64,000 nt of DNA, taken from the NCBI GenBank assembly GCA_965644495.1, contig CBFFSA010000012.1, positions 62,001-126,000 of the forward strand, in the 5' to 3' direction. Both the position numbers and the translations under genes were made by a program. Positions 18,911-58,561 of this stretch are shown in pieces. Each line of letters begins with the position of its first letter. The stretch's first letter is position 1. The stretch is from Perkinsela sp. CCAP 1560/9. Lineage: Eukaryota; Protista; Euglenozoa: Kinetoplastea. The notes beneath the pieces were generated by a model. It did not search any database, was not told the DNA's origin, and saw only the letters and a list, made by a program, of their open reading frames with translations.

Positions 18911-19395
18911 GGCCGGGCCAATGAGTCACGTCAAAGTGTGACGCTGAGTTCGTGGGAAGCAATTTGCGAAGCCCTAGGTGATGATCAGTTGTATTGGACG
19001 ACACCGAGACAAACCACAGAAATCCCGGATACGACAAGGTCTAGATATCATAAAGAGAGAAAAAACCGGAGCTGTGGACGCGAAAAAGAAGCCCAATTGA
19101 AAAAGTATGAATTTTTTGATACTAATTATTGAGATCAAACTTGCACGCCCAAGGGATCTCTTTTGGGAAATTTCATAAGGAAAGCACAAATGAATAAACA
19201 ATCGAGTTTTATATAATATTTCGCACAAAAGCTTTACTCCATTGTATCAAGATTGCGCACGATTTCCAAGGTGCTAACAATCGCTTCTTCACCAGCAGAT
19301 GAAACTGCTTCATGAGAATTCTCAGAGTCGGGAGAGTCATACAAGAGCGGAGGGCGACACTTTAAAATCTCTTTGTGGAGGCTCAGTGGGGATGT

Positions 19396-19955
19396 TCGAT
19401 GTTCATGCGCTCGTTGGCGCAGAGATACAGCCCTTGATGCGACAACCGATATCATCGGCACAATCCGTAATGACGGATGTCGCACCAAGGGGATTAGCAC
19501 GGACTCTGTCGGTAGAGGGGGTCCAGGCAACTCGCCCTCTCTTTACGCAGCCGGAGGGGCACACTGCAACCGACTCGGTCCCAGTCGGTAGAGGTGGTCC
19601 AGGCAACTCACCACCTCTTTACGCAGCCGGAGGGGCGCACTGCAACCGACCGCTGCCTCGCGATAAGACGAGGCGGAGCCACGCCCAGTGGTCTTCAAGG
19701 GAGGTCACCATGGCGCATGGCTCCCCGGGAAGGAAAGGGCGCGAAAGGAAGAAATCCGGGGAGGGAAGAAAACTCGCTCAAAGAGTGAGCCGGGGAGGGG
19801 TGATGGGGTGGAAGCGCGTCCCCTACTTTGCCGAGAAAGAGGGACAGTTTCGGCCTTAGTGCCGGCCGGCAACGGGCATATGAACAGTAAGACTATGCCC
19901 GTTGCCGGGGAAAGAAAAGATAAACAAGGTACAGAAACTGTATCTTTATAGCGTT
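19396..19955 (-). mobile_element. SL-headed non-coding retroposon (SINE-like) inserted in the IS30 transposase 3' end
   Basis: Starts with AACGCTATAAAGATACAGTTTCTGTACCTTGTTT; ends with ATCTC-TGCGC-CAACGA-GCGCA-TGAACATCGA, a motif shared with the LINE 3' end; no credible ORF. Confidence 0.75.
19922..19955 (-). other. Spliced-leader exon copy
   Basis: Matches the kinetoplastid SL core AACGCTAT...ACAGTTTCTGTAC...TTG; not followed by a GT-starting SL intron. Confidence 0.8.
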
Positions 19956-20879
19956 CCCAAGAACTTCTTTTGGACGCTCATTTATTTCAAATGCAACGCG
20001 GCGCACCTCTTCCTGCGACTGGGCAAGAAACGGGAGCTTTTTAGGATAATAGTCGCGCACTAGGCCATTAAAATTTTCAACGCCCCCCTTCTCCCAGCTC
20101 GCATACGGCTTGCAGAAAAAGGAAATGCAGTCATACGCCTGGTTGATTATCTCGTGCTTTGCGAATTCCGTACCATTGTCGTATGTAATGCTTTGCACAC
20201 GGTAGCCTTTGAGAGCTTCAACGATCATGTCAGCCACATGATCTGACTTTTTGTTCTCAAGTTTACGCAGTATTCCAAATCTACTCTTCCGCTCGATCAG
20301 GCTTAAAAGATATCCGCTGTGTTTGGCGCCTTCGATGAGATCAGCTTCCCAATCTCCATATCTCTCTCTGTTGTTTATTATCTCAGGGCGTTCAGAAATA
20401 TCTACACGATTTTGAATACGAAATCGATTCGAGCCACGGCGACGCCGACATCGGCGTGAGCCGCCACGGCGGAGAAAACGTCCCAAGTTTCCACCGTAGC
20501 CTTCATCTCGTTTTATAAAATTATAAATCGCCTTCCGAGATGTACTGATACCATGCTCCTTATTCAGAGTGACACTAATCTGTTGCGGGCTGTATCGCCG
20601 TTCCAGAAGGCTGGTCACTAGTCCAGTTACTTCGCCGTCTACTTTCCGGTGGCGGACCAAGCGCTTTGACATTGTATTCTTCGCCGTTCGTTCGGCCAAG
20701 CGAGGGTCATACACGTTTCGCTTGCAGCCCCGCTTCAATTCACGGCTGAGTCCTGACTGCGTAATCCCTACTTGTTCTGCAATCTCCTCCTGTGACATCT
20801 CTCCGTTATTATATAACAATGCGATATGCGACCGATGAGTTGAATCGATGCGTGTGCTGACTCTACCTTCCACCGTCAT
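19956..20879 (-). CDS. IS30-family DDE transposase, with its extreme C-terminus displaced by the retroposon
   Basis: N-terminal HTH (SQEEIAEQVG...SRELKR), SPQQIS, ISERP, GDWEAD, ERKSRF, SITYDNGTEF, PYASWEKGGVENFNGLVRDYYPK, INERPKEVLG. Confidence 0.92.
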
Positions 20880-20905
20880 TCACAGAAAATTAACAAAAAA
20901 TGTAT

Positions 20906-21064
20906 TATGACAGATAAGGGTGCAGTATGACAGATAAGGGTGCCTTATGACAGATAAGGGTGTATATGACAGACAAGGGTGCATTATGACAGATAAGGGT
21001 GCATTATGACAGATAAGGGTGCATTTATGACAGATAAGGGTGCATTTATGACAGATAAGGGTGC
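20906..21064. repeat. Subterminal array of 8 x TATGACAGATAAGGGTG (19-21-bp period); 2 inverted copies at 18551-18592
   Basis: Counted directly; spacers are only 2-4 nt. Confidence 0.95.
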
Positions 21065-23217
21065 GGGTGCCCCCCCCTACCCGGGGGTGATCCCCGCGCG
21101 CATGCGCAGGACGGGTCCGCCAAGTTCGGATTTTTTCGGAATTTTTTTTTTGAAAAAAAATTCAACTGGGCGAAAAAAATGGCTAAAAAAATATTTTTTC
21201 CAAAATCGTTTCCCCTATTGTATTTTTATAGTTTGAGACCTATACAAGCAGTATAGGCTTTCTCCGCAGTTGTTTTCGCAGGCTAGCTCTTCTTCGAGCC
21301 GTGGTATGCCCGCGAAATTGGCCCATTTTTGACTAAAAGGGATGAAAAAGTATTTTTCACCCCTTTCATTTTTGGACCCCAAGCGGCCCTTTTGGGTCGA
21401 AAAAATGGTGTGGTTGGAGTCGTATTCTCTACCCAATACGGTTGGTAGGCTTTCAGTCCTGCCTACGAGTGATTTCCCGCACGCAAATGTCGGATTTAGT
21501 GCTCTGAGAGCTAAAATACGCAAAAATGGCCTCATTTTTACCCAAAAATCGGCGATTTTTGGCTATAATCATTCTGTTTTCTTCAGCTTTCCAGACCAAA
21601 TTTTCTTTTTTAGGCTCTTCGTTAAACGCGGTGGTAGTTTTCGACGCGAAGATCGCAGCATGAGTGACTTAAGAATGGCTATAAAAAGATTCCAAAATCG
21701 TTTCCCCTATTGTATTTGTATAGTTTGGGACCTATACTAGCCTTCTCCGCAGTTGTTTTCGCAAGATATCTCTTCTTGAGGCCGTGGTATGCCCTCGAAA
21801 ATGGTCTATTTTTGACTAAAAAAGGTGAAAAAGTATGTTTCAGACCCCAAGGGCCCTTTTTGTGTCAAAAGAATCATCGGAAGTCAGCTGTTTCATGCAT
21901 AACCTGTATTTCCTGTAACCCGTTGTGCGCTTTCCACATTGGCACGCATGGCACTCAGCGTTTCCTTGAATGCGCGGGATATCTCTTCAATATTTTTCGG
22001 AGCGGTACTTGCGGGACATACAGTGTACTTGCGCAGTACTTGCGGGACAGTATGTTGGCGGTGACGGGCACGTTTTTGTAATTACAGCGCAGGCATGTCT
22101 CCACATCCACAGTGGTAGATACTGCGTCTTCTGGTTCTTGATACACGAGACAACGCCTAGGAGCCAACACCGAAACGGTTTTTTTTCACATTCCGTACAG
22201 TAAAGCTGCGGAAGAGAATCTTGCCCAGACGTACACCCCTGTCCAGCTTCTGTGATAGAAAAGAAAGGTTATGATATTGGATATTGAATACGTATCTAGC
22301 GTCACTTTTGCGTTATCTAAGCATGCATCAATATATCTTTTAAAAACATAAAAAAAAACCCAAAAATATAAAAAAGCGTCTCTCTGCTTATAAGGACCCC
22401 GAGGAAATGATTGAGCTTTGGGGACGGGCCACAGTTGTGTGGGACGCACTTCCCAGTGCCCTATGCGCGTCCACAGCGAGCAGCATACCTCGCCGTATGA
22501 GAGCGGTGATTGCTGCGAGAGGGGGGCATACAAAGTATTAGTTTTACCTTGTTTTTACCGTTTATTAATCAAGAAATAATCCATCTTTTTATCAAAAAAT
22601 CTTCACTCGAAAAAAGTGTAAAAAATGTCTCAATAATATTTTTCACTCAAGGGTGTTACAGGTCCTCGTACACCCCCGTTCCCCTGTTTTGCCCGGTATT
22701 ATGTGATAAAAAAAGTTTCTGTTTGGGTCTAAAGAGTGGTTTTTCGGCATAATTAGGTGATGCCCTACCAGGGAAAAATATGCCTATAGTCAAACCGCAT
22801 GCGATAAACATGGGAGGAAGGGCAAAAATCTGAGAATTTGCTCATCTGGGCAGTGAAAAAAATCCTGTGAAACTTTTCAAAAATTCTCATCTTCAAGTAA
22901 AATAACTCGGTTTAATAGGAAAGGAAGATCCGAGGAGTCTGCAGGCCATCCTGGGAGAGTGTGAGAGCCTACTCTTTGTTTTAGGTGGAGGAGATTTCAT
23001 CATCAATGCTCGTGTCTTGTCAAAGACGTGTCATCTCTGAAAGAAGAACATCGAAAAGAAAAAGAAAAATTACTTTTTTTTTTAAATTTTGTCAAAGGCA
23101 GACGCGGTTTTCACAGAGATATAAATACTTAAACATGTTCCTCTGAACTAGAACTTGCAGAAAGTTGCATAATTTCTATCGAAATACTAAAGTGGATGAA
23201 ATATTCACTGTAGTATT

Positions 23218-24483
23218 TCAGTAAGGGATCTTCTTTCCTCCATACAAAATAACCATTTCCATTCGTTTTTTAAAAGTACGGTGCAGTTTATAACATTCCT
23301 TCCGACAAGCAGGAGACTTCAAGTATCGATCGCACACTTCCTTTATTTCACTCACGGTATTTGGTCTATGTTTATTCTTGTACAGCTTGAGAATACTCCA
23401 GAAATTTTCTATTGGGTTTAGATTCGGGGAGTCCGCTGGCCATCTTGGGAGAGTCTGAGCACTCTTCACCTCTTTACAAAGCCGCAGAGCCTCAACCCGG
23501 GGATGAGATTTCCACCAGGCGATTGTTAGTATGGCACTTGTGCCCAGGCGCGTTATCGTCCATAAAAATTTTGTTTCCTATCTTTTCCCACGGAAGATAC
23601 GTCTTTTGCAAAAAGCAACTTCGATAATACAATGTTCCGAGCCCTTCTTTTGGAGGAATTTCTTCTTGACCCCCGTTTCGAGTATATTCGTCGTAAAAAG
23701 ATTTGAATTCACACCAGTGATGGAGGAAATTCCCGTCGACATCCATAGCGCCTCATAACATTATTTGAGGTGGATGGTCCGTGCGGGATTTGGATACTGG
23801 GGAATCCGGGTGTTGCCAGGTTTTTCTGGATGAGTCACCGGCCTGTATCATAACTTCGTCAGAAAAAATTAGGCGCGAAAAAAAAAATTGGTCTCGATTG
23901 TCCTGTTCTTGCAGCATTGCTTGTGCAAAGCGAACTCGGGCTTCCATCTTTGATACACTCAGACAAAGAGTATGAACTTTGGGTCCGTAGTGATACTTAT
24001 GGTGCAATAATAATTGGCGTACCTTCTTGCGAGAAGGGACGATCTTGAAGTTTGTCAGCTTCACGTACGCGCATTGAATATCTGTAATTGTACGGTATGA
24101 GCCGTACATAGAAATTGCTTGCGGCAAAAGGTCAGTAGCCGCATCGTAGTGTTCCCATTTCATAATGGAATTTCATCCTGCTCCTCTCCGGTGGAAACTT
24201 TGACAGGAGAATTCCAGAGCCGCCGACATGTCGTGCGCTCCAGAGAAAACATGTAGCCCAACTCCCAACGTTGCACTCGTCCCGTTGATTGAATCTTTTT
24301 GAAGGCAAACGTGTCTTCCTCATTGAGCGCCCCTTTTCCGTGGACTAGGATTGGTAGAGAATCGGTATCTCGCGGTTTTCTTCCACGCTTGCGCTTGGAA
24401 CTGAAACGCCCGCGCCGTATAACTGAATCCCCTTCATCAGAAGAAGGTACTTCTTCAACGGGTCGTTGCTGAAGGTAGCTCAA
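23218..24483 (-). pseudogene. Tc1/IS630-like transposase pseudogene (in-frame stop and frameshifts)
   Basis: LIFSDE, IML*GA, FMDDNAPGH and WPADSPNLNPIENFW across four ORF pieces. TIRs not identified. Confidence 0.85.
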
Positions 24484-26206
24484 GATATTTAGGAGTTTGA
24501 TTTCTTTAGCGGCTCTTTTCTCGCTTTCCAGGGTAACTCCTTGAGATAACTCCTAAAGATAGAAGTATACATAAATCGTGGTAAAATAACCTTAAAAAAC
24601 AAAAAAAGAACACAATTCGTTACTGAAAAACGCGGAAAAAACGAACCTTTTTTGCTTAGCCACCACAGCTGAAACAAGGGGTGAAAAACGCATTTTTTAC
24701 ATGCTCTGGCGAATCATCTACGTACTTTGCTGAAAAAATTATTCGAAAAGATCATCTGGTGCGCTCAATCAATGGTCAGTGGCCTCATGGTCAGTGTGAT
24801 GGTACATACCCCTACATAACCCCCATATACTATGACAACGATTCGTCTTTCATTTCAAAAATAGTCACTCAACAAAATATTTTTTCATAACAATTGAGAC
24901 ATTTTTTAACGTCACTGTACTTAGAACGGTGTTCCGTGTTCCCGGAACAGTGTTCCGTGTTCCAAGGAATCACAACGTATGAAGAGTAGCTAATTGTGTC
25001 TGTTTATTTTCTTTGAATGTACGTGCCTTACGGCGATTTCGCAGTAAACTACTACGTTTTTTCGTTTGGTTTTTTTGTCTATGTGACTCACTCTGCTGCT
25101 TCATTTTGGATTTCATTTCACTCCTGGTTATTTTTTCATAAGTTTCCGCACCCTTTTTCCGTTTTCTAGAGCATTTTATGATTTTTGTCTCACCTTTCTC
25201 CTCTAAAATCTTTTTCACTTCCTCCCCATACTCATCAATACTCGCCCCGTCACCCCCGTCATGCTTGAGAAAAGCACACGAGCAAGACTCTCGCGACTTC
25301 CATTCCTGTACTATTGGCGATGTAGAAGGCAATATTGCTACCGAATCGTTGTAGAGGCTTCTGTTGCCAACTTCCCATTACACACATTCTGCATTCCGCA
25401 TCAAACCGAATGCAGACTTAACAAAGTCATTTTTATGTTGATTATAGTGTAATAATTTGTGGTGATCAATTGAGGCGAAAAACCTTTCTACACGGTTTCT
25501 GATACGGTGAGACTTCATATCAAAAAAGCCTAATGCTTCCACGAGAATCGTGTAGTCCAATGGAGCTTCGCACAATACCCGGGAAACACTACTGATAGTC
25601 GGATTTTCCAATAACAACTTTCGTTTTGTCACCCATTCCACACAGAGCGTCGTTACCGCCTCTGCCAAACGATCCATAATTTCTTTTGGGGGGAGGGAAG
25701 TAAACTGCTCTAGTGGGACCATAAGGGAAATCGTACACGGTCGCTTCAGCACACGTTTAATACCGTACACAACCCACTTACGCAGGCGTTCATACAGCTC
25801 TGGTGTTGGATCCACGTAAGGATCACCCGATTCATCAGGCGGAGGTAATTCCATGGAAGGCAAACAAATACGACAAAAAGAATTTATAGTGAGTAAAATG
25901 TCGGGGATTATTGATCGTTAGGCGCTTTGTTAAAATTTTTGAAGGGCATTCCAAATACTAAATTTTTTTACTTGTATTTCATCAGCTCATCTTCTGAGGC
26001 CGAAATAATAGCCATTCGTGCTTTCAATTTCCCATTTTTATCGTTCGTGTGTTGTCCATGCAGTATCGATACGCTACCGAACTCTATACAAGTAAGTGTG
26101 TCACACCTTGGGTAATATTTTCTTCAGGAATTTTATTGATGAGATCACACATAGTAGTACAAAGAAATAGGGGATTGTGTAGGACTTCATTCAATCGTAA
26201 TAGAAA

Positions 26207-27798
26207 ATGTCGGATGATCAACTGACTCACGTTAATAAATGTAGCTCTGCTCGAGGAAAGATTCGTGGTGCCTGTTTCCCTCCAGAAATCGAACTTGCAC
26301 TATTTACAAAATATCTTAAAAATACGGATTTCACGTGGAATTCTCATGTTCCTGCCTGTAAGTGGTCTGGAATTCGTTGCACCGACCTTACCATGTCTGA
26401 TGCCGTTACAGACCTTGACTGGGGATTCCGTAACCTTCAAGGAACTCCACAATGGGGACACATACCTTCGTCTGTACGCCGAATAAATTTTCTTTTTTAG
26501 GCTCTTCGTTAAACGCGGTGGTTGTTTTCAACTTAGAAGTCACTCATGCTGCGCGCTTCGCGTTGAAAACTGCCGCCGCGTTTAACGAAGAGCCCAAAAA
26601 AGAAAATCTAGCCTGGAAAACGGAAAGATTATAGCCAAAAATAGCCGAATTTCGGGTAAAAATGGGGTGATTTTCGCGTATTTTTCCTCTCAGAGCACTA
26701 AATCCGACATTTGCGCGTGGGAAATCACTCGTAGGCATGAATGAAAGCCTACCGAACGTATTGGGTAGAGAATACGACTCCAACCATACCATTCTTTCGA
26801 CACAAAAATGCCCCTTTAGGTCCGAAAAATACTTTTTCACCTTTTTTAGTCAAAATTGGGTCATTTTGAGGGGCGCACCACATTTCGAAGAAGTGATACC
26901 TTGCGAAAACAACTGCGTAGAAAGCTAGTGTAGGTCCCAAACTATCAAAATACAATAGGGGAAACGATTTTGGAAAAATATTTTTTTTGTCATTTTTTTC
27001 ACCAAGTTGAATTTTTTTTCAAATTTTTTTTCCGAAAAAATCCGAACTTGGCGGACCCGTCCTGCGGATACGCGGGGGGGTCACCCCCGGGTAGGGGGGT
27101 GGAAAATGCGCGCCAAGACCCTGGCTACCCTTCCTGCGGTTTTTTTTCGAAAACTAATTTTTTCGAAAAAATTTGCTCGACCATGCCCCCCCCCCGTGGA
27201 CCCCCCCCATGGACCCCCCATTTTTTTCAATTTTTTTTTTCAGTTTTGGACCACCGGAGCCCCCTTTTATATTTTTTTCTTCTATTATATTACTGTGTTC
27301 CCCTTTATATTTTCACTGTTTTTGTTCACTTTTTTTTCAATAATCGAGTGTAGAGCGGTAGTTTTACAACCACCGCAATGGTACACTAGATCTAGAGAAT
27401 ATGCCGCCTGATATGAGTGATGCAAGTTTTGGTTCAAACTTTTTTTGGTGGCACACTCGATCTTAGTACGTTACCCGCGGATCTTTTGCAATTTCACGCA
27501 TATAAAAACTCCTTTGTGGGTTCTCTAAATCTTACTACATTACCACAATCACTGCAATATCTGGACCTCAGCGCTAACCTCTTTTCGATTTGAGTCGTCT
27601 TCCCCATGGTTTATTAGTTCTTGATCTGGCATCAAATCGCCTGGAGAAGGTAACAGGGTTAGATTTACTGCCTTCCACCTTGGAAGAGCTGAACCTTGCG
27701 AAGAACCTTGAGCTTTGTGGAGAGTACAATAAAGCCTCGTTACCTGTGTCTCTTGATTTTGAAATCCTAGAGGCAAACCTAGCTGGTGTAGGGGCATA
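26207..27798 (+). pseudogene. Disrupted duplicate of the LRR gene at 28232-29032
   Basis: Near-identical to 28232-29032, interrupted by a family A copy and carrying small indels and stops. Confidence 0.9.
26489..27378 (-). mobile_element. Repeat family A, full copy in reverse orientation
   Basis: Reverse complement of 62853-63768; both junctions can be defined against the intact LRR paralogue. Confidence 0.9.
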
Positions 27799-28231
27799 GT
27801 TTAGGTCTACAAGTACAAACGACGGAAACCGATTTGTGAACACAAAATTATTTGGACAAGCATGCGGTCTTTGTGATACTCTTCTCCATTACACTTATTT
27901 TCTTCAGAGCAATATTTATAGAATTTTAGAGGCGAGAGGCTGTGGATGTGGATGTGATCATTATGAATGACAGGAGGAGTACTACTGGTATCGTAAGTCA
28001 TTTTAGTAATGGCATTTTTATATATTTTCGTATCCACAATTTGATTCACATTAAAAACGTACAAAACGTTTGTGTGTTGTCCATACAGTATCGATACGCT
28101 ACCGAACTCTATACAAGTAAGTGTGTCACACCTTGGGTAATATTTTCTTCAGGAATTTTATTGATGAGATCACACATAGTAGTACAAAGAAATAGGGGAT
28201 TGTGTAGGACTTCATTCAATCGTAATAGAAA

Positions 28232-29032
28232 ATGTCGGATGATCAACTGACTCACGTTAATAAATGTAGCTCTGCTCGAGGAAAGATTCGTGGTGCCTGT
28301 TTCCCTCCAGAAGTCGAACTTGCACTATTTACAAAATATCTTAAAAATACGGATTTCACGTGGAATTCTCATGTTCCTGCCTGTAAGTGGTCTGGAATTC
28401 GTTGCACCGACCTTACCATGTCTGATGCTGTTACACACCTTGACTGGGGATTCCGTAACCTTCAAGGAACTCCACAATGGGGACACATACCTTCGTCTGT
28501 ACGCCTAATAAATGTCTTTGTTAATGAGCTAACGGGAGTGGTGCCACTCAGCCTTCTACCTCGTGGACTTGACGAATTGGATTTGGGAGGCAACATATTC
28601 AGTGGTACACTAGATCTAGAGAATATGCCACCTGATGTGAGTGATGCGAGTTTTGGTTCAAACTTGTTTAATGGCACACTCGAGCTGGGTACGCTACCCG
28701 CGGATCTTTTGCAATTTCGCGCATACAAAAATTCCTTTGTAGGGTCTCTAAATCTTACTACATTACCACAATCACTGGAGCATCTGGACCTCAGCGCTAA
28801 CCTATTTTCAGGTGGTATCGATTTGAGTCGTCTTCCCCATGGTTTATTAGTTCTTGATCTGGCATCAAATCGCCTGGAGAAGGTAACAGGGTTAGATTTA
28901 CTGCCTTCCACCTTGGAAGAGTTGAACCTTGCGAAGAACCTTGAGCTTTGTGGAGAGTACAATAAAGCCTCGTTACCTGTGTCTCTTGATTTTGAAATCC
29001 TAGAGACAAACCTAGTTGGTGTAGGGGCATAG
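28232..29032 (+). CDS. LRR protein
   Basis: CKWSGIRC cap, about 7 LRRs. Confidence 0.88.
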   Translation: MSDDQLTHVNKCSSARGKIRGACFPPEVELALFTKYLKNTDFTWNSHVPACKWSGIRCTDLTMSDAVTHLDWGFRNLQGTPQWGHIPSSVRLINVFVNELTGVVPLSLLPRGLDELDLGGNIFSGTLDLENMPPDVSDASFGSNLFNGTLELGTLPADLLQFRAYKNSFVGSLNLTTLPQSLEHLDLSANLFSGGIDLSRLPHGLLVLDLASNRLEKVTGLDLLPSTLEELNLAKNLELCGEYNKASLPVSLDFEILETNLVGVGA

Positions 29033-44501: not shown

Positions 44502-45937
44502 GAGGGGTGACTCCTACCCAGGCGCTTCTAGGCGCTTCCAGTGAACTTCTATGGAGTTCGGACTTGGTAATTTGAGGACAAGCAACATAAACCCCCCTAT
44601 AGGGGGACATGGGGGGACACCTTTTTCTATTTTCTAAAAGATTGTCCAAGAAGGTGACAGATTGGGCCTCGGCTATCATTCGGGTGCGGTAGTAAGGCAT
44701 TTTGCACTGCGCCAGAAAGAGACGAACGGCTTAAATTGTTGTTGGTTTTGTTGGTAATAAGAGCGTCTGCAATACCCTCATGCAAGCGCCGAAAGTACCA
44801 CTCCGGCTCTCGCGCTCCGCCCGATTGCGGGGACGCAAGGCTCTTCTAGGTCGCTTCACCAATGTGTGTGTGATTCAAGCCATTTGGCTCCGAAGAACTG
44901 TGGCTTCCTACTTCACGTGTAGGTCGCGCTGCCGGTTCTCCACGCGAAGCGTGATCTTCTAACACGAGAGCGTCGAAACGCTCGATCATGTTGTTAGGTC
45001 CGGGCCGTTTGTCTCCGAAGAGATGTGGCCTCCTCACTTTCCGCGTAGGTAGCGGTGCTGGTGCTCCACGCGCGGAGTAAATCTACAGCGCGAGAGCCTA
45101 GGTTCAACCGCAGCATGTAGACACCCGACTTGCCTCCTGCGGGGAGTGCGGCCGGTGTCGCGGCGGGTGGCGCGGTGGGTGGCGTGGCGGGGAGCGCGGG
45201 TGGGGAGCTCAGCGGGGAGGGATGCGGGGAGCACGGCGGGGAGAGCGGCGGAAGCGCGGCGGGTAGCACGGTGGTGGTCAGAGGGAGGGGTGAGGGGGGT
45301 CATCGGGGAAAGAAAGAAAGAGTCCAACAGGGTACACCGACCGTCCAACAACAAGGATCCGATCAACAAGGTACAAAAAAGAAACGCTCGATCATACAGG
45401 TAGACACCGGACTTTCCTCACGGGCGGTCAGGCGGGCGGCGCATGGGTGAAGGAGGGTGCGAAGAGGGCGGGGCAGGGAGTCGAATTGAGTGGCCAGGAG
45501 GCTGGCCAAGAGTGAGGGCGAAGGCCCAGAGGGCAGGCGAGGAGGGCAGGCGAAGACGGCAGGCGAGGAGGGCAGCCAGGGGGCGCCGAGGAGAGCGGCG
45601 AAGAGCGATGAAGGCTCACCAGTGACGATGAACATTCCATAGTTAGCCTACCATGTCTCAAAAAGATATAAAACGGCTCCGTCGGTCCAAAATTGAAAAC
45701 AAAAATCAAAAAATGGAGAGTTCCCACACCTGGGGATGACCGCCCTGATACATTCTAAAATATTTATGTACTTGAAACCATAATAAAGTCTTGTAGGCTA
45801 AACATTTCCAACAACATGATCACCAGATCCTCTAACTGAAGCAAGAAAAGATTAAGAAAAATAAAAAAGAAATATTAAGACAAAGGTCCTTGGCGCTTCC
45901 AGGCGCTTCTAGGCGCTCCCAGGCGCTCCCACCCCTC
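44502..45937. mobile_element. TAA-TSD element (PIF/Harbinger- or Zator-like, non-autonomous)
   Basis: TAA|GAGGGGTG...CACCCCTC|TAA; the empty site is visible in family B copy 2. Confidence 0.8.
44990..45380 (-). mobile_element. GC-rich retroposed insert with SL relics and a 15-bp TSD
   Basis: GAAACGCTCGATCAT at 44975-44989 and 45381-45395; the minus-strand 5' end reads TGTACCTTGTTG. Confidence 0.65.
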
Positions 45938-48423: not shown

Positions 48424-48467
48424 CTCAGAATTGTGACTTTTACTGTATAGTATACAGTAGAGATGTA

Positions 48468-50870: not shown

Positions 50871-51490
50871 TATTATTATGTTTTGCTGCTGTTTCTTGCA
50901 AAAGATATAGTTTAGAATCTTTGCTAGTATCTTTGACGTTTTTACGTTCTCAGGTACGGGTAAAATCATGGTCAATCACTTTGATGGTGGGTTTTGTTGT
51001 GAGTGTCTTGAAATGAACTGTGTCACACGTCTTCCGTTTATTGAGGTTAAGTGAGGTTAGGCCCGCTGGTACGAGTTTTGTTGGATGTGGCATTGTTTTG
51101 TGCGGAAATCGTTCCAGATCGCACTTCCGCTTCTCGTCCCCGGAATTATAGAACTTACCTGAATTTGGACAGACGGCGCTCGTCACAATATTCGTCTTGC
51201 GGAGAACTACAAGTGGGAAAGCGTGAACCACCGTCGACTGTGCGTCACTGAGGAAAGCATACGCACAAACGCTGTGGAGTACACGTAAAGAAGCGCTTGA
51301 AGCGTGAAGGTGGCGTGTAGGGCCGGAAAGCCGCCCGGAGAGAAGATCGGGTGCAGGCCTACGCAGAGCAGGCAAGCGGAAGCTTGAAGTGTAATGGGGG
51401 GGATGCATTGCTGCGCGTGCTTGAAAATTTAACTTGACAGAGCATTGCATTTGCGTGTATGTATAGTGTCCGCATTTTAAGCCTAAGTTG

Positions 51491-51850
51491 TCAGTTTATT
51501 GCTTCTGGGGCTAGGAAACCTTTTTTGCAGTAAACATACTTCGACCCATGTGAAATAAACAACCCCATCTCATCAACGTTCCATACTCGAACTTCACCGT
51601 ACGCCTCGGCGTGAAATGCACTTTCTGAACAAAACTTAATACTTCTGTATCCCAACTTAATACTTCTATATCCCTTAATACTTCTGTATATACTTTTTCC
51701 TTCAAGTTTACTTCCCGTGATACTGAGGACGTAGGACTGTGGTTGTTGGGTGAACTGTTTCTTGTCATCCATCGAGGAAAATACACAAGCTTCGAGCGTT
51801 AGCTGATTCTTACGGCGCGCAACCCCGGCATGTTTTCTCTTCGGCATAGT
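51491..51850 (-). pseudogene. pogo/Tigger-like transposase remnant
   Basis: VWNVDEMG resembles the IWNxDETG first-D motif. Confidence 0.5.
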
Positions 51851-52162
51851 AGCAGAATTAATAATTTTTTCCTTTACTGCCCCCCCCATTTACTATTGAG
51901 TGCTCAACTCCCCTATTTAGTGTTGAATTTTGGGTTCGGTGCGTATAGGCGCCGCGAAGCGGTGCTTAATTTGTTTCCCAAAAACGTTTTTTATCTTTGC
52001 TTGTTGCGATAGGCTCGTAAGTCCCCATCCTTGCATCGAGTACAATAGTTCACTTGTGGCGCTCTGCGCCATATTCAATCATTTGCGAATGTGCCTAGTT
52101 ACGAATTTCTGAAGTCTCAGGATGAAGTTCATGGTTAGGCCAGGATTCGGTGTAAACACATA

Positions 52163-52923
52163 CAGGGGTGAAAACTTCCATCTGGGGAGGGTCTAAAATT
52201 TGCAAAAACTTTTCAATTTCGGAAAATAATACCGCATTCGAGAGCTCTCGCAGATTTGTATGTCTTTGCACTGGTAGCTTTTGACATATCAAATTAGAAC
52301 TCCAAATAGCGAATAGGCCAAAAAAGCAAATTGTCACTTAAAGAAATAATAAAAATATCAGATATTTTTAGGAAACATTATTTTAAAACCCATGTAGCAT
52401 CCACAATATGCACCCTTCTTTTCTACGATGATTCTACAACGTTTTCTGAAGTTTTTTAACATATTTTCAAACTTATCTTAGTCTTTTGTCTGAAGTTTAT
52501 CGTAAAAAACATGAATCGTTCCACCCAGAGTTTCACAGTTCCCTAGTGGACCCAAACACTTTGATACACTTTGTAAGTCCGGGAAGAAGACTGTTTTTTC
52601 TCGAAGTCGGCCACAAGAAGTAATCTTTAGTGTACTTTAATCTTCCCTGGCTAAGCATAAGAACGGGCGTTCGAAACACCATGAGAATTCCTTGAGCGAA
52701 CTCGCTTTTGGGGCGTAAAATGGGGCAAAAATGAAAAATTGCCATATTTTCACAAGAAAAAAAACATGTTTTTTTCTCATCGGATTAAATCTTTCAAACC
52801 GAGCGTTCCGAATACGCCAAAGACATACAACTCTGCGAGATCTCTCCAATGCGCTATTATTTTCCAAAATTGGACAATTTTTACAAAATTTAGCCCCCCC
52901 ACAGATGGAAGTTTTCACCCCTA
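52163..52923. mobile_element. MITE with ~105-bp imperfect TIRs
   Basis: AGGGGTGAAAACTTCCATCTG...CAGATGGAAGTTTTCACCCCT, TA-like flanks. Confidence 0.8.
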
Positions 52924-53052
52924 TATAAGTATATTAGTCGCGAGGTTGTTCGATATTCATGCAGTTTAACTGCAGAGATTGATACCTAGAAGATGCATGA
53001 CTAGCACGCAATCCTCGCACAAAACGAGTTTCTCCTAGGTTTTTAAAACTCT

Positions 53053-55506
53053 TCACCAGCACGTGCCCTCACTCCACTGCTCAATGTCGCGATTATTAAA
53101 ATTTTTGAAACTGCCACTAAGGGCTCTTGTTGCCATATGCTGACGACATCGCGAGGCGGTGGCCTTGTTTCCACCAAAAAGGGAGTTCAGTGCTCGAGTT
53201 GAGCTGTTGAGCTTTCCCCTGGCACCTACTTCAATGGCCAGGAGAAAAGTGGCTGGGTTCGACATTTTCCGCTGTAGATACATATGTCCATACTTCTGCA
53301 TCTTCCGTTCGTGTGAGGAGATAAAGTTTTCCTCCCACGGAGATGTCAGTTCGAGTATGAACTCAGAACCGTTCTTAAGTTGGACCCATCCATCAGGTCG
53401 GAGGGACGATTCTTGCCCGCTCAGCCAGGTTGGCGGATTCTGATGGTGAGCGAGGTCAAAGTGATACTGTGCGGTTTCGGGGGATTGTCGAATAGCATCT
53501 GCAAGGGCGTGTAGAATGAGGTTGTGTCGGAAGGTATACCGCCCCTGTTGCAGGGCGGCCTTGCAGCCTGTTAGAACGTGGCGCACAGTTTGTACGTCTT
53601 CTGTGCAAATGGGGCATTTACGGTTCGTGTGGGAACTGAGGCTCCAGCGGTGTAAGGCGGATCGGGTCGGAAGCGGGGTCTGTGTCAGAACAGATGAAGC
53701 AAATCTGGAGAGCGACGTACTTTTAATATTGCACAGAGCAGCAGCGAAGTCTTTCGCGAGGTCGTCTTCTGTAGCCATGCGAAACCACTGCCCCGCGATT
53801 GGTGCTCGACGCTGCACAGCTTCTGAGAGATGTCTTTCGTATTCATGTTCAATGTACTGCCGTGTCGATGCGTGATTTCCACTGCGGTCGTACAACTCGA
53901 CGACTGGTCGCACTTGTCCGGAAGAACGTTTGTCGTGTTCACGACGGATGCGATATCTCAGCGCTTGTTGCACTGCTGGATCACGAGATTTTTTCATCTG
54001 TTGAACTGCTGTGCCTGTGCAGAGTAACCAAAGCTTAGACAGGCTGGTGAGAGCCCAGCCGCGTTCAGAGTACAGAACTTCGCTCGTAGCTGTTTTGGCC
54101 ATGTTTATCCATTTTCGAATGTGTCTCGTCGCATATTTTTGTAGTCGAAGGATAAAGTTTAGTGTGATTCCTGGATTGACCGTGAGCACATATCGCAGGC
54201 GAGATATGATTACGTTATTATAGGCCCAGAGACGAGCGGGGGTATCTAGGGCACTATTGGATACATTGTTCAACCAAAATCGTAGCTGCTTTAGGAGACT
54301 TTTGAACAGCACCTTCCCTTGTTGGGCCCCCGGCGCGAGTGTCATACCTAGGAACTGACTTCCTTTGTCGCAAACGTTGGGAATACTCTCACCGTATGCC
54401 AAGATACGGGGTCTGTGGGTCTTATATCCGCCTTCTGCTACAGACATGTGTTGGAGACGACATTTCGGTACGTTAAGGAGCATGCCTAACCTGGAAAGCA
54501 TGTTCACCAGGGCGTTCGTCACGTGTTGCATTTCTTCAGCCGAGTTCGTGATGATAGCCAGATCGTCTGCAAAGGCTTTTAAGAACGACTCTTGGTTGCC
54601 CCATTTAATACCATAGCTAGGGAAGCTCGATCGGAGATATCGTAGAACCACTTCCATCGCGAGATTGAATAGTACGGGGGATAGTGTGTCGCCCTGGAGG
54701 ACACCTCGTTTGACGGGGATGTGTTTGGTCAGCCCTTCCGAACATTTGATCCGGATAGTCGCATCATGGTATAGGGAGCGGATGTACGCGATGATTTGAG
54801 GTGATACCTTTGCCCACGTTAGGACTTGAAAGAGAATGGAGTGTGGGAGAGAACCAAACGCGTTCTTTAAGTCAAATTGACCAAGGCAGTATTGTCGTTT
54901 ATGCTGTCGTTGAAAGTCCAATAGTTCACAGAGTGACTGGGTATGCTCGATAGTTCCATTTACGTTTGGCAAAAATCCTTTTTGTATGGTTGTGTCAATT
55001 ATTCCTGTCGTCACAGCATGGCTCAAGATTCTGTGGCCAATAATGGAGTGGAGTAACTTACCAAGGCAGCTCGTAAGACTGATGGGTCTCCAGTTGGACA
55101 ATTGGTTGGGAGCTCCGCCTTTGTGAATGAGTCGGGTGGCGGCCTGTTTCCAATAGGGAGGGCTGACCGAATGCTTTAGTACGTCATTGAAGACTTGCGC
55201 GATGAACGGGTAGAGCTCTTCGCAGCGTCGAAGAAATGCGTTTCCTACGTTATCGGAGCCTGGGGCAGCCGAGGGGCGTTTCGAGGAGATTGCCACTGCT
55301 ATGGTTGGTACGTCGATTGCTTCCCATTCCATTGCATTCTCTAGATCCAGGCCAAGGAGGTTTGTTGGAGGTAGACTATGATCTTCCGTGTCTGTGCTTA
55401 ACGATTCTTGGAAAAATGTTTCGATAGCTGCTTGCGAGCAGTCTGGAAAGGTTGCCGGCTGATTTACCAGTTGCTCGTTCTTGTCAAGACACTCTCCGGC
55501 TGCTGT
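53053..55506 (-). CDS. Reverse transcriptase plus CCHC knuckle plus restriction-like endonuclease
   Basis: APGSD, WRPISL, QKGF, DLKNAFGS, GVLQGDTLSP, FADD, FLG; CPIC...H....C; RYTFRHN; RPDG...ELTSPWE...KMQKY. Confidence 0.93.
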   Translation of the reverse strand, partial: TAAGECLDKNEQLVNQPATFPDCSQAAIETFFQESLSTDTEDHSLPPTNLLGLDLENAMEWEAIDVPTIAVAISSKRPSAAPGSDNVGNAFLRRCEELYPFIAQVFNDVLKHSVSPPYWKQAATRLIHKGGAPNQLSNWRPISLTSCLGKLLHSIIGHRILSHAVTTGIIDTTIQKGFLPNVNGTIEHTQSLCELLDFQRQHKRQYCLGQFDLKNAFGSLPHSILFQVLTWAKVSPQIIAYIRSLYHDATIRIKCSEGLTKHIPVKRGVLQGDTLSPVLFNLAMEVVLRYLRSSFPSYGIKWGNQESFLKAFADDLAIITNSAEEMQHVTNALVNMLSRLGMLLNVPKCRLQHMSVAEGGYKTHRPRILAYGESIPNVCDKGSQFLGMTLAPGAQQGKVLFKSLLKQLRFWLNNVSNSALDTPARLWAYNNVIISRLRYVLTVNPGITLNFILRLQKYATRHIRKWINMAKTATSEVLYSERGWALTSLSKLWLLCTGTAVQQMKKSRDPAVQQALRYRIRREHDKRSSGQVRPVVELYDRSGNHASTRQYIEHEYERHLSEAVQRRAPIAGQWFRMATEDDLAKDFAAALCNIKSTSLSRFASSVLTQTPLPTRSALHRWSLSSHTNRKCPICTEDVQTVRHVLTGCKAALQQGRYTFRHNLILHALADAIRQSPETAQYHFDLAHHQNPPTWLSGQESSLRPDGWVQLKNGSEFILELTSPWEENFISSHERKMQKYGHMYLQRKMSNPATFLLAIEVGARGKLNSSTRALNSLFGGNKATASRCRQHMATRALSGSFKNFNNRDIEQWSEGTCW

Positions 55507-57453
55507 CTAAGGGTTTCTTTGGAACCTGTCCATCATCCAGCGTTTCTCTCGTTCTTGTTTGACTAGTTTCGCTTCTTCCGTGTACAGCTTATGCGCTTTG
55601 GTCGCTTCTTTTATGTTGCCGATCAAGCGGTCCCTTTCTGAGCGTCCGTGGGTAAAGGAAAGAGTACGTTTCAGTTGACGGATGTGTCCTGCTAGTTGCT
55701 TCGCAGAGCGGTCATAGCTAAGGGGTCGTGTGGGGCGTTTCGCATGGCCAATTTTGGAGCGCAATTTGAACCCTTTGGTGGGGTCGAGTTCCCGTACAAC
55801 TTCATAAACCGAGACCGCCATGCAAGCTGTCAGTAATTCCGTATGTAGTAGGGCTTCGCTCGGGGTTGATGCAGGCTTTAAGTACTTTTTACATCTATCC
55901 ATGGCCTTCTTTATTGCCAGCTGCCATTGGTCCTGTGAGAGGCTTATCATGACCCGCCCTCCTTCGATCGTACGCATGGTGCTTAACAAGTATTCAGCCG
56001 TCTCGGTGTCTAATATGTTTTCATTTCGAGATCTATTCCTCTGTGAGTTCAGGATCGTGCTGTCATTCGGCCCGTGGGTCTGCCGTGGTCCGCCCCGCGG
56101 TGGGAGAGTCTGGGTAAGCGTCTGTGTGTTACTTTCAGTTCCGAAGGTTGGCGCTGGTTCCGAGGTTACGTTGTTCACCGGTGGATGTGCTGGTTGTCGT
56201 GGAGACTGATTGATGCGGGTTTCTTCGGAGGCATTTGTGGAGCGTCTTTCGTGGCGCTGATCTCGTGGTGAACTCCGTGCGGCGCCTATTTTGGTTTCTA
56301 CCTGTCTTTGGGGCTCAAAAGATACGGATCTTTCGCTGTGACCAGCAGGTGCTTGTCCGTTTGTCTCGTTGTTAGACAGATTCCACGAGAAGAGGTTGCG
56401 TAGGCTCCAGCGGGTGGGTTCCTGCCGAGCGTCCTGAGGGCGGCTGAGTACTCCCTCCTTACAACATTGGTGTTTGCATTCGGCCTTGTTGCGGCATACG
56501 TACTTGCAGGGCCTGCGCGAGAGTTCTTGTTCTTCCGACGTTGTTATGTGATGCAGATTTCTGTCTGGCGGTGTCTGAGTGCGTGGGGCGGGTGAGGGAG
56601 GGGTGGCAATTACTGTTGTTTCTTCGTTTAGGGATTCAAGTCTTCTAGGGTCGATCTTTACCCCAATCTTGCAACACATGTGCTTACATTGTTGCTTGTT
56701 TTGGCAAATGTGTTTACATGATCGTCGAGGTGTCGCGCATGTGCTAGACGTTTGTTCATCTCGAAGCCATGGTGTAGCATCAGGCCTGGCATCAGACTTT
56801 TGGATTGCACTATCTGCTCTCTGCATATCTGGGTGAGGTGAGGGGTGGTCCATAGGTTCGGGGTCAATACTGATCTTGCAACATTGGTGGAAGCATATGC
56901 GCTTGTTCAAAAATCGATGAGAACACGGTTGAGTACGGCTGGGTCGAGCTTCGTGGTTGGGGGTTGGTTCGTCCGTTGTACGAGGCAGCGGATGACTTCT
57001 GTTTGGTGCATGGCCACCCGGTTCCTCTGGACGATTGTTGGTGAGCTCGGGTTCCATCCCAACTTTGCAACACGGGTGGAGACAGGTGCGTTTATTCGAG
57101 CAGCGGTGGGCACAAGGTTGTTGCCGCACTGTCCGCGTTCCTTGTGCCGCCGCCTGATTGGGCTTCCGGATCAGGAAAGGTTCGCCGTACTCAATCCTAG
57201 TTCTTTCCCAAGAGCCTTCATCGTGTACTTCCTTAGTGTGGACGTGGGTTAGGTCGAACGCCGCAAGTCCCGAGATGTTGTTCCCAGCCAGTTTCTTCTT
57301 GATGGCGCGTCCAAGGGTTCCAGGACAAGAGTACTGTTTATCTAGCTGTAGAGATGCGTCTGCGTGTGCTGTCGCCCAGCTAGTGTGCCGGAATATCCTG
57401 TGTGGCGGTGCAATTTCGCGGAATACGAAATGTTCGCATGCTTCCTCGTTCAT
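55507..57453 (-). CDS. N-terminal part of the retrotransposon protein, with four CxHxCxNKxxCxHxCCK repeats; in frame with the RT across one TAG
   Basis: Repeats are visible in the translation; 58 open codons link the TAG at 55507-55509 to the ATG at 55332. Confidence 0.8.
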   Translation of the reverse strand: MNEEACEHFVFREIAPPHRIFRHTSWATAHADASLQLDKQYSCPGTLGRAIKKKLAGNNISGLAAFDLTHVHTKEVHDEGSWERTRIEYGEPFLIRKPNQAAAQGTRTVRQQPCAHRCSNKRTCLHPCCKVGMEPELTNNRPEEPGGHAPNRSHPLPRTTDEPTPNHEARPSRTQPCSHRFLNKRICFHQCCKISIDPEPMDHPSPHPDMQRADSAIQKSDARPDATPWLRDEQTSSTCATPRRSCKHICQNKQQCKHMCCKIGVKIDPRRLESLNEETTVIATPPSPAPRTQTPPDRNLHHITTSEEQELSRRPCKYVCRNKAECKHQCCKEGVLSRPQDARQEPTRWSLRNLFSWNLSNNETNGQAPAGHSERSVSFEPQRQVETKIGAARSSPRDQRHERRSTNASEETRINQSPRQPAHPPVNNVTSEPAPTFGTESNTQTLTQTLPPRGGPRQTHGPNDSTILNSQRNRSRNENILDTETAEYLLSTMRTIEGGRVMISLSQDQWQLAIKKAMDRCKKYLKPASTPSEALLHTELLTACMAVSVYEVVRELDPTKGFKLRSKIGHAKRPTRPLSYDRSAKQLAGHIRQLKRTLSFTHGRSERDRLIGNIKEATKAHKLYTEEAKLVKQEREKRWMMDRFQRNP

Positions 57454-57655
57454 TACGTCTTGTAAAGTGCATTTTTCTACTAATATACCATCAGACCGCT
57501 TTGCTCCTGTTTCAAGGGTTCGTGCTAAGGAAAGTTCCGCTGAAATTTCGGCATTGAAGGGGACCTCGAGGGAGGTCGCCTTGCGCCTGGGGGGCAGAGG
57601 TAGTGGTGTGGAGTGACATGCCCCTGTAGGGGTGACAACAGTTAGTACAAAAGAT

Positions 57656-57683
57656 CAACAAGGTACAGAAACTGTATCTTTAT
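57656..57683 (-). other. Spliced-leader exon copy (3' 28 nt)
   Basis: ATAAAGATACAGTTTCTGTACCTTGTTG, identical to the 19922 copy except for the last base. Confidence 0.82.
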
Positions 57684-58561
57684 GCGTGGTTGTGTGCCTA
57701 AAGACGTACAGGAGTATATCTAGGGGACTTCCGGAGATATTTGTAAGCCAGGTGCGAAGTTTGTGTTGGAGACTCTTAAGCAGTATCTTCCCTTGTTAAG
57801 CGCCGGGATTCAGTGTCATGCCAACGAAGAGAGTAGCTGTCCACAGTACACTTCCGCACTAAGCCATGTAACGTAGCCTTATCTCGCTTCTTAACAGTAG
57901 TCTATACTGTGCGACTGCAACTAACATCCCTTTCGATACTTGTAATGGTTGCCATGTAGAAGGATTGAAGAACGGCCTTCGATACCCATCTTAGAAGTTG
58001 TCGTTTCCATTTAAAAGCAGTCACTCGGCTGACCGTACACAGGGACGGCTGACCGTACACAGGCTATACTAGACATTTCAACCCTCTGACACAGCTTAAT
58101 CCGGAACATGAATTTCGTCTTCGCCATCTTCGGCTTACCCGAAAAATAAGGAGTAAAACTGCTTAATCGCTCTCGACACTTTGCGTTTCCATTCCTTCCC
58201 CAAAATACCGGTCGAACAAAAAAATTGACATTTTTTAAATTTGGTCCTTCGAGCTCGAAAAAAAAGTCGGACCAATATTTATGTGGAGTAGAATTATTGG
58301 AGCCAAATTTTTCGTGCATTGAAACAAAAAAAATTATCTTCCTGGCCTCCCTCGAGGTTTGACATCGTTATTAGATTTTTCGTTTTCCAGAAAACGAAGG
58401 ACCGTACTTTCAGATTTTTTGCTTCGTGTGTTGTTCCAGTAGCCCACAACACTTGCGACCTTTCATGTCTCACACAATTGTGTGAATCAAAATGAAGCAA
58501 AATCACTCGCTTTGTTGGTCGGGGAAAAATGCATTTTTTACGTTGCAGCCTTTCAACCTTA

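What the first reader, a model, noticed from the sequence alone, without database searches (positions are those of the whole stretch)
19393..57693. Spliced-leader-headed LINE/SINE pair sharing a covarying 3' hairpin
Seen: the RT+RLE element (52950-57683) and the non-coding insert (19396-19955) are otherwise unrelated, yet both start with the SL exon followed by ATCTTTT. Both also end in the same motif. The LINE reads ATCTC-TGCAGT-TAA-ACTGCA-TGAATATCGAACA (52947-52979). The insert reads ATCTC-TGCGC-CAACGA-GCGCA-TGAACATCGAACA (19393-19426). The flanks are conserved while the stem differs in sequence but still pairs. Known: kinetoplastid mRNAs receive the SL by trans-splicing; SINEs are mobilised through LINE-like 3' tails; CRE/SLACS/CZAR insert into SL gene arrays. 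Inference: this dispersed RLE retrotransposon is cut out of polycistronic RNA by trans-splicing, which sets its 5' end, and it mobilises an SL-capped structured SINE through the 3' hairpin. I know of no described pair like this.
Basis: partly seen in the sequence, partly recalled or inferred. Interest (0 to 1): 0.92.

Follow-up and report, generated by a model that had tools for sequence, protein, structure and literature searches.

The report
Spliced-leader-headed LINE and SINE retroposons
A 4.7-kb R2-type jumping gene and a 557-bp non-coding passenger in a deep-branching kinetoplastid genome both start with a DNA copy of the cell's spliced leader and end in the same small folded RNA signal.

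Summary
The core observation holds, and the scan has already reported spliced-leader (SL)-headed retrotransposons on other DNA of this genome.

**What is confirmed**
- Both elements lie on the minus strand and begin at nt 11 of the true SL. SL genes read SL|GTATGAG.
- Both end in ATCTC, then a hairpin TGC(NNN)-loop-(NNN)GCA, then TGA.
- This 3' module occurs 152 times in the 21-Mb genome and 0 times in the reversed control.
- It closes several LINE and SINE families. Its three inner stem pairs covary: 90.6% of cells are paired, and 0 of 500 shuffles match.
- The insert is a real SINE-like family of at least 40 copies. Three empty paralogous sites fix it at 19393-19949 with no target-site duplication (TSD).
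- The LINE encodes RT, a CCHC knuckle and a restriction-like endonuclease (RLE), and aligns to R2 structures through the RLE.

**What is wrong or copy-specific**
- "AACGCT" is target DNA, not SL.
- "ATCTTTT" directly after the SL occurs only in this 5'-deleted SINE copy.
- The "GAACA" tail is rare. Both families normally end in ATC plus a few A.

**What is not shown**
- Trans-splicing of the element RNAs, because no RNA data could be obtained.
- That this particular LINE drives this SINE. Its tail TGAAYATC fits best, but every LINE stem differs from the SINE stem. Insertion-site preferences also differ: 0 of 8 LINE copies versus 10 of 28 SINE copies sit in LRR repeats.

I rate it a new variant of known kinds.

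The parts
19393..19949 (-). SINE-like non-coding retroposon ('SINE-1'), 557 bp, a 5'-deleted variant of its family
   Evidence: At least 40 copies at 84-96% identity. Three empty paralogous sites abut exactly at 19392/19950. No tRNA or Rfam match.
19923..19949 (-). SL relic, SL nt 11-37. Nt 38 reads T instead of G and is followed directly by ATCTTTT
   Evidence: SL start position nt 11.
19431..19491 (-). SINE 3' three-way-junction (Y) domain
   Evidence: Fold of -45.9 kcal/mol, z = -4.6.
19403..19426 (-). SINE 3' module: ATCTC + hairpin TGCGC-CAACGA-GCGCA + TGA
19393..19402 (-). SINE tail ACATC + GAACA. The GAACA is a rare variant of the usual AAAA(N) and lies inside the insert
52947..57683 (-). 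'LINE-A': two-ORF R2-superfamily non-LTR retrotransposon. The 3' end may be 52950 if the TSD is real
57656..57683 (-). SL relic, SL nt 11-38, followed by ATCTTTTGTACTAAC...
55507..57453 (-). ORF1, 648 aa, with four Cys-rich repeats (C-x3-C-x5/6-C-x3-CC) and no Pfam match
   Evidence: The two-ORF layout is also seen in copy L096.
53053..55332 (-). ORF2, 759 aa: RT (about 54343-55125) plus CCHC and RLE (about 53290-53616)
   Evidence: RVT_1 E = 4.6e-31. Invariant C573, C576, H585, RH602-603, RPD645-647, ELT661-663, K677, Y681. The profile aligns to R2 structures through the RLE, E = 6e-92.
52984..53040 (-). LINE 3' UTR Y domain: long stem enclosing two hairpins, one with loop UUUUGUG
   Evidence: CUCG/CGAG becomes CCCG/CGGG in LINE-B.
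52957..52979 (-). LINE 3' module: ATCTC + hairpin TGCAGT-TAA-ACTGCA + TGA
52940..52949 (-). Candidate TSD copy, 3' side (ACAACCTCGC)
   Evidence: 9 of 10 match to 57684-57693. Chance about 2e-4.
57684..57693 (-). Candidate TSD copy, 5' side (ACAACCACGC)

Best explanation
The window holds two members of a genome-wide superfamily of non-LTR retroposons in a deep-branching kinetoplastid.

LINE-A is an R2-superfamily element with two ORFs. ORF2 carries RT, a CCHC knuckle and a restriction-like endonuclease. It inserts at dispersed sites. SINE-1 is a non-coding passenger family of about 575 bp.

Shown:
- DNA copies of both start inside the cell's SL exon, mostly at nt 10-13.
- Both end in a conserved 3' RNA module: a Y-shaped three-way junction, an ATCTC linker, a 5-6 bp hairpin with a fixed TGC/GCA base and covarying inner pairs, then TGA, about 5 nt and a short A-rich or stuttered tail.

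Inferred:
- The RNA templates carried the SL because they were trans-spliced out of polycistronic transcripts. The SL can be added again at downstream sites in later rounds.
- The 3' module is the signal that the LINE protein binds to start target-primed reverse transcription, as in R2 and in stringent LINE/SINE pairs.
- The SINE mimics this module in shape and flanks, not in stem sequence, and is therefore copied in trans by a LINE of this superfamily. LINE-A is the closest candidate.
For: SL identity:
- Tandem SL genes (297-bp period) read SL|GTATGAG and sit next to a 5S rRNA gene.
- There are 528 dispersed SL cores but only 8 with the intron.

The elements are real insertions:
- The SINE family has at least 40 copies, including 5'-truncated ones.
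- Three empty sites match the SINE boundaries exactly.
- Flanks differ in every copy.

3' module:
- 152 exact hits versus 0 in the reversed control. The covariance model R1 finds at least 129.
- Across 23 distinct variants, 90.6% of cells pair, against 14-52% when the partner is slid. The changes AU<->GC, GC<->CG and UA<->GC/CG keep pairing, and 0 of 500 shuffles reach the observed score.
- Four families fold into the same Y-domain-plus-hairpin layout.

LINE enzyme: the profile aligns to solved R2 proteins through CCHC and RLE, E = 6e-92.

Recurrent SL addition: four clear SINE 5' variants (five copies) begin exactly at the SL 3' end. One of them (L043, L045) lies after an internal pyrimidine tract plus AG.

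Link between LINE-A and SINE-1:
- The tail TGAAYATC is shared only by these two among 10 or more families.
- Both start at SL nt 10-13, whereas other LINE families start at nt 3.
- A head-to-tail LINE-A::SINE chimera joined through an A-run exists at L096:6590.
Against:
- The SL ends in TG, so a DNA-encoded SL gives no canonical AG acceptor at the junction.
- 5' ends clustering at SL nt 10-13, together with ATAAAGAT stutters, would also fit RNAs that start inside the relic.
- No sampled LINE carries the SINE's GC stem.
- SINE-1 sits in an LRR motif in 10 of 28 copies and LINE-A in 0 of 8 (p = 0.076).
- TSDs are mostly absent, so the integration chemistry is inferred by analogy with R2.
Confidence: 0.6

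Rival explanations
1. The SINE is mobilised by a different LINE family of the same superfamily, such as the LRR-targeting LINE-B type, and not by the LINE in this window. The window pair is then a coincidence of neighbourhood.
For: 10 of 28 SINE-1 copies and 2 of 4 LINE-B copies lie at the same point of an LRR coding repeat, against 0 of 8 LINE-A copies. All families share the ATCTC-hairpin-TGA module.
Against: The LINE-B tail (TGATAAAC) is further from the SINE tail (TGAACATC) than the LINE-A tail (TGAATATC) is. A LINE-A::SINE chimera exists. The samples are small (p = 0.076).
Confidence: 0.3
2. The SL relic is an inherited, fixed 5' module that is not renewed by trans-splicing. It would act as an internal initiator or promoter, or as a processing signal, like Pr77 of L1Tc/ingi. 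The RNAs would start at about SL nt 10-13.
For: 5' ends cluster at nt 10-13 in 23 of 28 SINE copies and in LINE-A copies. ATAAAGAT stutters at 5' junctions look like end-of-template jumps. Pr77 binds the SL-gene factors SNAP50 and TBP (PMC8190864).
Against: Four clear SINE junction variants start exactly at the SL 3' end. Other families carry the SL from nt 3. Unrelated families all carry the same SL. Known SL promoters lie upstream of the gene (own knowledge).
Confidence: 0.2
3. The conserved 3' hairpin is not an RT recognition signal. It would be a 3'-end formation or stability signal, or simply common descent of the SINE 3' end from a LINE.
For: No binding data exist. The module is short. 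SINE families swap 3' halves.
Against: Compensatory changes keep pairing while the flanks stay invariant. The module sits a fixed 5 nt or so from the reverse-transcription start in every family. Analogy with the R2 3' UTR and the UnaL2 hairpin (PMC3414825, PMC1636434).
Confidence: 0.1

Closest known systems
Stringent LINE/SINE pairs (eel UnaL2/UnaSINE1, zebrafish ZfL2): PMC1636434, PMC4176376
   Same: The LINE and its non-coding partner share a short 3' tail with a conserved stem-loop plus short terminal repeats. This tail is needed for recognition by the LINE protein.
   Different: Those are APE-type LINEs with Pol III-promoter SINE heads and near-identical tails. Here the LINE is RLE-type and the SINE head is an SL relic with no tRNA, 5S or 7SL part. 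Only the flanks and the fold are shared, not the stem sequence.
R2 and its non-autonomous SIDEs (PMC3414825)
   Same: An RLE LINE whose RNA is cut out of a host co-transcript at the 5' end and is bound by its protein through a structured 3' UTR. The passengers keep a 5' processing module and a 3' binding module.
   Different: R2 uses a self-cleaving ribozyme and a single rDNA target. Here no ribozyme is found, the 5' mark is the host SL, insertion is dispersed, and the SINE is not an internal-deletion derivative of the LINE.
CRE-clade elements SLACS, CZAR and CRE1 of trypanosomatids
   Same: Kinetoplastid RLE non-LTR elements with two ORFs and an association with the SL.
   Different: By own knowledge, those insert into SL genes between SL nt 11 and 12, so SL pieces flank them on both sides. 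Here SL nt 11-38 sits only at the 5' end and the copies lie outside SL genes. The shared nt 11 boundary is unexplained.
Dinoflagellate retrogenes with relict DinoSL (PMC6050394, PMC5585692), and dispersed SL fragments near retrotransposons in Perkinsela (PMC5601477)
   Same: A DNA-encoded SL at the 5' end marks copies made from trans-spliced RNA. Perkinsela has over 500 SL-like pieces, some beside retrotransposons, and uses non-AG acceptors (TG 26%).
   Different: Those reports concern host-gene retrocopies or unclassified fragments. They do not describe autonomous and non-autonomous retroposon families with a defined shared 3' module.

Membership tests
R2-superfamily (RLE-bearing) non-LTR retrotransposon | Reverse transcriptase domain of the non-LTR type | tested here: met
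   RVT_1 E = 4.6e-31. R2 and L1 structures match at E about 1e-30.
R2-superfamily (RLE-bearing) non-LTR retrotransposon | CCHC knuckle and PD-(D/E)xK restriction-like endonuclease C-terminal to the RT, with no APE domain | tested here: met
   Invariant C573, C576, H585, RPD645-647, ELT661-663, K677, Y681. The profile aligns to R2 chains up to residue 1155 of 1169, whereas L1 matches the RT only. No APE hit in either ORF.
R2-superfamily (RLE-bearing) non-LTR retrotransposon | Site-specific insertion, usual for the group | tested here: inconclusive
   Eight LINE-A 3' flanks show no common sequence. The sample is small.
CRE clade (SLACS/CZAR/CRE1) | Insertion inside SL RNA genes between SL nt 11 and 12 | tested here: not met
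   The window copy and its relatives lie outside SL genes. SL nt 11-38 is at the 5' end only, with no SL intron downstream.
CRE clade (SLACS/CZAR/CRE1) | RT phylogeny groups with CRE references | not tested
   No named CRE, HERO, NeSL or R4 reference sequences were at hand. The best outside hits are unnamed or cnidarian.
Stringent LINE/SINE partnership | Partner elements share the 3' tail recognised by the LINE protein | tested here: inconclusive
   ATCTC, the stem base, TGAAYATC and the overall fold are shared, but the inner stem and loop differ. No sampled LINE has the SINE's stem.
Stringent LINE/SINE partnership | Trans-mobilisation of the SINE by the LINE protein | not testable with these tools
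   This needs binding, TPRT or retrotransposition assays.
SINE in the strict sense | Head derived from tRNA, 7SL or 5S with an internal Pol III promoter | tested here: not met
   ARAGORN finds none. Rfam gives no credible match. The head is an SL relic, so 'SINE-like non-autonomous retroposon' is the safer name.
SL-relic retrocopies (dinoflagellate type) | DNA-encoded SL at the 5' end of an insertion away from SL genes | tested here: met

The most novel reading that the evidence does not exclude
The DNA-encoded SL relic is a working, self-renewing 5' cassette. Its pyrimidine-rich 3' half plus the terminal TG (or the next site downstream) would serve as the trans-splice acceptor. Every read-through transcript would then regain a capped SL at the same junction. 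Together with the 3' Y-junction and hairpin, this would make a portable two-ended retrotransposition cassette that unrelated RNAs can acquire. The SINE families that share a 5' half but carry swapped 3' halves would be examples.
Probability: 0.2. Interest if true: 0.85.

Novelty: new variant of a known kind. Interest (0 to 1): 0.66.

Why it matters
In kinetoplastids nearly all mRNAs are made by cutting polycistronic transcripts through SL trans-splicing. How mobile elements obtain a defined, translatable RNA in such a system is known only for L1Tc/ingi, which uses the Pr77 promoter and ribozyme.

These elements appear to use the host's own SL pathway for the 5' end and a compact covarying RNA module for the 3' end. 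If so, they offer four things:
- A natural record of trans-splice site choice, written in DNA.
- A small, defined RNA signal for an R2-like enzyme that inserts at dispersed sites, which is relevant to R2-based insertion tools.
- A LINE/SINE system in which recognition depends on shape and flanks, not stem sequence.
- An explanation for the hundreds of 'SL gene fragments' reported in Perkinsela.

Tried and rejected
- **Genome allowance.** I therefore could not fetch further LINE-A 5' ends, other LINE families or all 528 SL heads. Later own-genome searches gave coordinates only.
- **TSD scan.** Across 28 SINE copies there is no consistent duplication. The few long matches lie in tandem repeats.
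- **A LINE with the SINE's exact hairpin.** The 5.2-kb-spaced hits at C1:394-406 kb are a segmental repeat holding a SINE fragment, not a LINE.
- **SL relic versus SINE body divergence.** The difference (0.6% against 1.9%) disappears once the 11 nt forced by my locating pattern are discounted. The cross-family 'identical SL' is an ascertainment effect of the pattern search. Neither is used as evidence.
- **Known RNA families.** Rfam finds no ribozyme or other family in the LINE, the SINE or their flanks.
- **LINE empty site.** The 3' flank is itself a repeat of 40 or more copies and the 5' flank is unique, so none was found.
- **Literature.** The SL core as a text string gave no hits.
- **Rejected readings.** The 3' motif as target sequence is rejected, because flanks differ and empty sites lack it. 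Insertion into an SL gene is rejected, because no intron follows.
Full report
**Observation**

Both features lie on the minus strand. The 22-nt SL core occurs exactly twice in the window, at 19923-19944 and 57657-57678, against 0 expected. TGAAYATCGAACA occurs at 19393-19405 and 52947-52959. The hairpins and their ATCTC and TGA flanks read as described. A sensitive comparison finds no other similarity between the two elements beyond 35 nt at the head and 16 nt at the tail.

**The true spliced leader**

The genome (21 Mb, 110 contigs) has 528 dispersed matches to the SL core, with 0 in the control. Only 8 of them continue into an intron...CCTTGTTG|GTATGAG.

Two such genes form a 297-bp tandem next to a 5S rRNA gene. 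The 38-nt exon is L003:1797-1834:-. Both window elements match it from nt 11 (ATAAAG...).

**The short insert is a real retroposon with exact boundaries**

- It belongs to a family of at least 40 copies at 84-96% identity, some of them 5'-truncated.
- It sits in the C-terminal part of an HTH + DDE (IS30-like) transposase ORF.
- Three other copies of that host sequence lack the insert. Hits to the left and right flanks abut without gap or overlap at C48:1754/1755, C19:5307/5308 and C5:419959/419960, once 19950-19955 is counted as flank.
- The insert is therefore 19393-19949 (557 bp). It has no target-site duplication or deletion. AACGCT is target DNA, and the terminal GAACA belongs to the insert.
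- Across 28 family members there is no consistent TSD. By own knowledge, variable or absent TSDs are usual for R2-type elements.

**Two of the 'shared' strings are peculiar to these copies**

- The family consensus head is SL + GGTACATTTTCCCTTTAG + TTCATCTTTTC.... The window copy lacks about 21 nt, which brings ATCTTTT next to the SL by accident.
- The family tails are ...CATGAACATC + AAAA(N) for the SINE and ...CATGAATATC + AAAA or ATAT(C) for the LINE.
- GAACA occurs only in the window SINE, the window LINE and one more SINE. In the SINE it looks like a stutter of its own end (GAACATC GAACA).
- In the LINE it overlaps a candidate 10-bp TSD, 52940-52949 against 57684-57693. This is a 9 of 10 match with a chance of about 2e-4.

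**The LINE**

- ORF2 (759 aa) has RVT_1, a CCHC knuckle, and the motifs RHN, RPD, ELT and K..KY. These are invariant across 18 homologues.
- A profile of those homologues aligns to solved R2 proteins from before the RT through the endonuclease (E = 6e-92). L1 ORF2 matches the RT only.
- ORF1 (648 aa) has four Cys-rich repeats and no Pfam family.
- A second copy from another assembly has the same two-frame layout.
- About five copies are 97-100% identical at the 3' end, and older ones exist. Their flanks show no common target.
- The element is an RLE-bearing non-LTR retrotransposon. It is not a CRE-type SL-gene insertion. Its clade was not tested.

**The 3' module**

- The pattern ATCTCTGC-N(6-18)-GCATGA has 152 genome hits and none in the reversed control. 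A covariance model finds at least 129 of the 150 candidates scored, and only the two known sites in the window.
- The module closes at least eight families. These include four or more LINE types with open frames upstream and several SINE types.
- On 23 distinct variants the outer three pairs (U-A, G-C, C-G) are fixed. The inner three change on both sides while keeping pairing (AU<->GC, GC<->CG, UA<->GC/CG). Overall 90.6% of cells pair, against 14-52% when the partner is slid, and 0 of 500 shuffles reach the observed score.
- Flanks beyond the tail differ in every copy, and empty sites lack the motif.
- Upstream, LINE-A, LINE-B, SINE-1 and SINE-2 all fold into a long stem enclosing two hairpins. 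This Y domain is followed by the linker and the terminal hairpin. The LINE stems covary between families.

**Who drives the SINE**

For LINE-A:
- Among the sampled families only LINE-A and SINE-1 share the post-hairpin tail TGAAYATC.
- Both start at SL nt 10-13, while another LINE group starts at nt 3.
- A LINE-A copy is joined head-to-tail to a SINE-1-like copy through an A-run (L096:6590, also C10:472467). One reverse-transcription event that jumped between the two RNAs would give this.

Against LINE-A:
- No LINE sampled carries the SINE's GC stem.
- 10 of 28 SINE-1 copies lie at one point of an LRR coding repeat, about 8-10 nt before the Asn codon. So do 2 of 4 LINE-B copies, but 0 of 8 LINE-A copies (p = 0.076).

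The pairing is plausible but not established.

**How the SL head arises**

- For trans-splicing: four clear SINE 5' variants (five copies) are shortened exactly from the SL 3' end. They are SL|TTCATC (after TTTAG), SL|ATTTTCC, SL|CCTTAG and the window copy. Two further copies lack only the first G after the SL, which could be a simple 1-nt deletion. Random deletions would not share that left edge.
- The Perkinsela paper reports more than 500 dispersed SL pieces, some by retrotransposons, and acceptors that are AG in only 27% and TG in 26% of cases (PMC5601477).
- The window's CCT8 is closest to a transcriptome labelled PhM_4 (52% identity), then to Neobodo, Bodo and Trypanosoma. An RT relative comes from one labelled PhF_6. 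By my own knowledge these labels are free-living prokinetoplastids, so relaxed acceptors are conceivable here.
- Still unexplained: why copies begin at nt 10-13, why ATAAAGAT stutters occur at some 5' junctions, and how a relic ending in TG is re-spliced.
- No RNA data could be obtained.

**Comparison and novelty**

The system works like a stringent LINE/SINE pair (PMC1636434, PMC4176376) and like R2 with its SIDEs (PMC3414825). The host SL takes the place of the 5' ribozyme. SL relics on retrocopies are known from dinoflagellates (PMC6050394).

I found no paper describing SL-headed LINE and SINE families with a shared covarying 3' module in kinetoplastids. A recent mobilome survey of 57 trypanosomatids states that only four TE clades had so far been identified in that group (PMC12278014, abstract only).

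Earlier notes of this scan describe SL-headed retrotransposons on other pieces of this genome. One note placed the SINE start at SL position +5, which the empty sites contradict.

**Verdict**

The feature is real, and it is a new variant of known kinds.

Noticed in passing
window 18546-21069 (ORF 19956-20879, minus): HTH + DDE (rve-like, IS30-type) transposase ORF in a kinetoplastid genome, interrupted near its C-terminus by the SINE. At least three other copies exist (C48, C19, C5).
   Followed up: partly
window 44976-45395 (minus): A third retro-insert of about 390 bp, flanked by a perfect 15-bp duplication (GAAACGCTCGATCAT). Several partial SL 3' pieces (GTACCTTGTTG, CCTTGTTG, GTACCCTGTTG) are stacked near its 5' end. 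It has no ATCTC-hairpin module.
   Followed up: partly
window 52650-52926: The DNA just downstream of the LINE is itself a repeat with 40 or more copies. Its last 110 nt or so also match in inverted orientation, which suggests a terminal-inverted-repeat element.
   Followed up: no
L009-L022, L030 (for example C1:1442456, C1:1473672): Another SL-headed LINE group (SL + GAATTATTTCC...) always starts T+CTTTAACG. That is SL nt 3 onward, preceded by a T where the gene has A. This may be a misread of a modified cap-proximal base. Copies are often preceded by poly(A) of an upstream unit or by partial SL stacks.
   Followed up: no
L096:1660-1710; L047 5' junction: Stuttered repeats of SL nt 11-18 (ATAAAGAT, two or three times) sit directly upstream of the SL relic of a LINE-A copy and of a SINE copy.
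   Followed up: no
G000:C53:22240-38665: Four LINE-B 3' ends at a 5,370-bp period form a head-to-tail tandem array. One is shown with a long poly(A) after the hairpin (L083).
   Followed up: no
L003:2224-2342: A 5S rRNA gene lies about 400 bp from the tandem SL RNA genes. A SINE fragment lies in the opposite orientation beside them.
   Followed up: partly
window 19500-19650 (SINE positions 306-456): An internal tandem duplication of about 76 nt within the SINE, about 89% identical and present in all family members.
   Followed up: no
L002, L005, L006, L008, L023, L027, L094, L095: SINE families share the 5' 280 nt or so (about 76-87% identity) but carry different 3' halves and different hairpin stems (GC/GC against ACT/AGT). 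The build is modular.
   Followed up: partly
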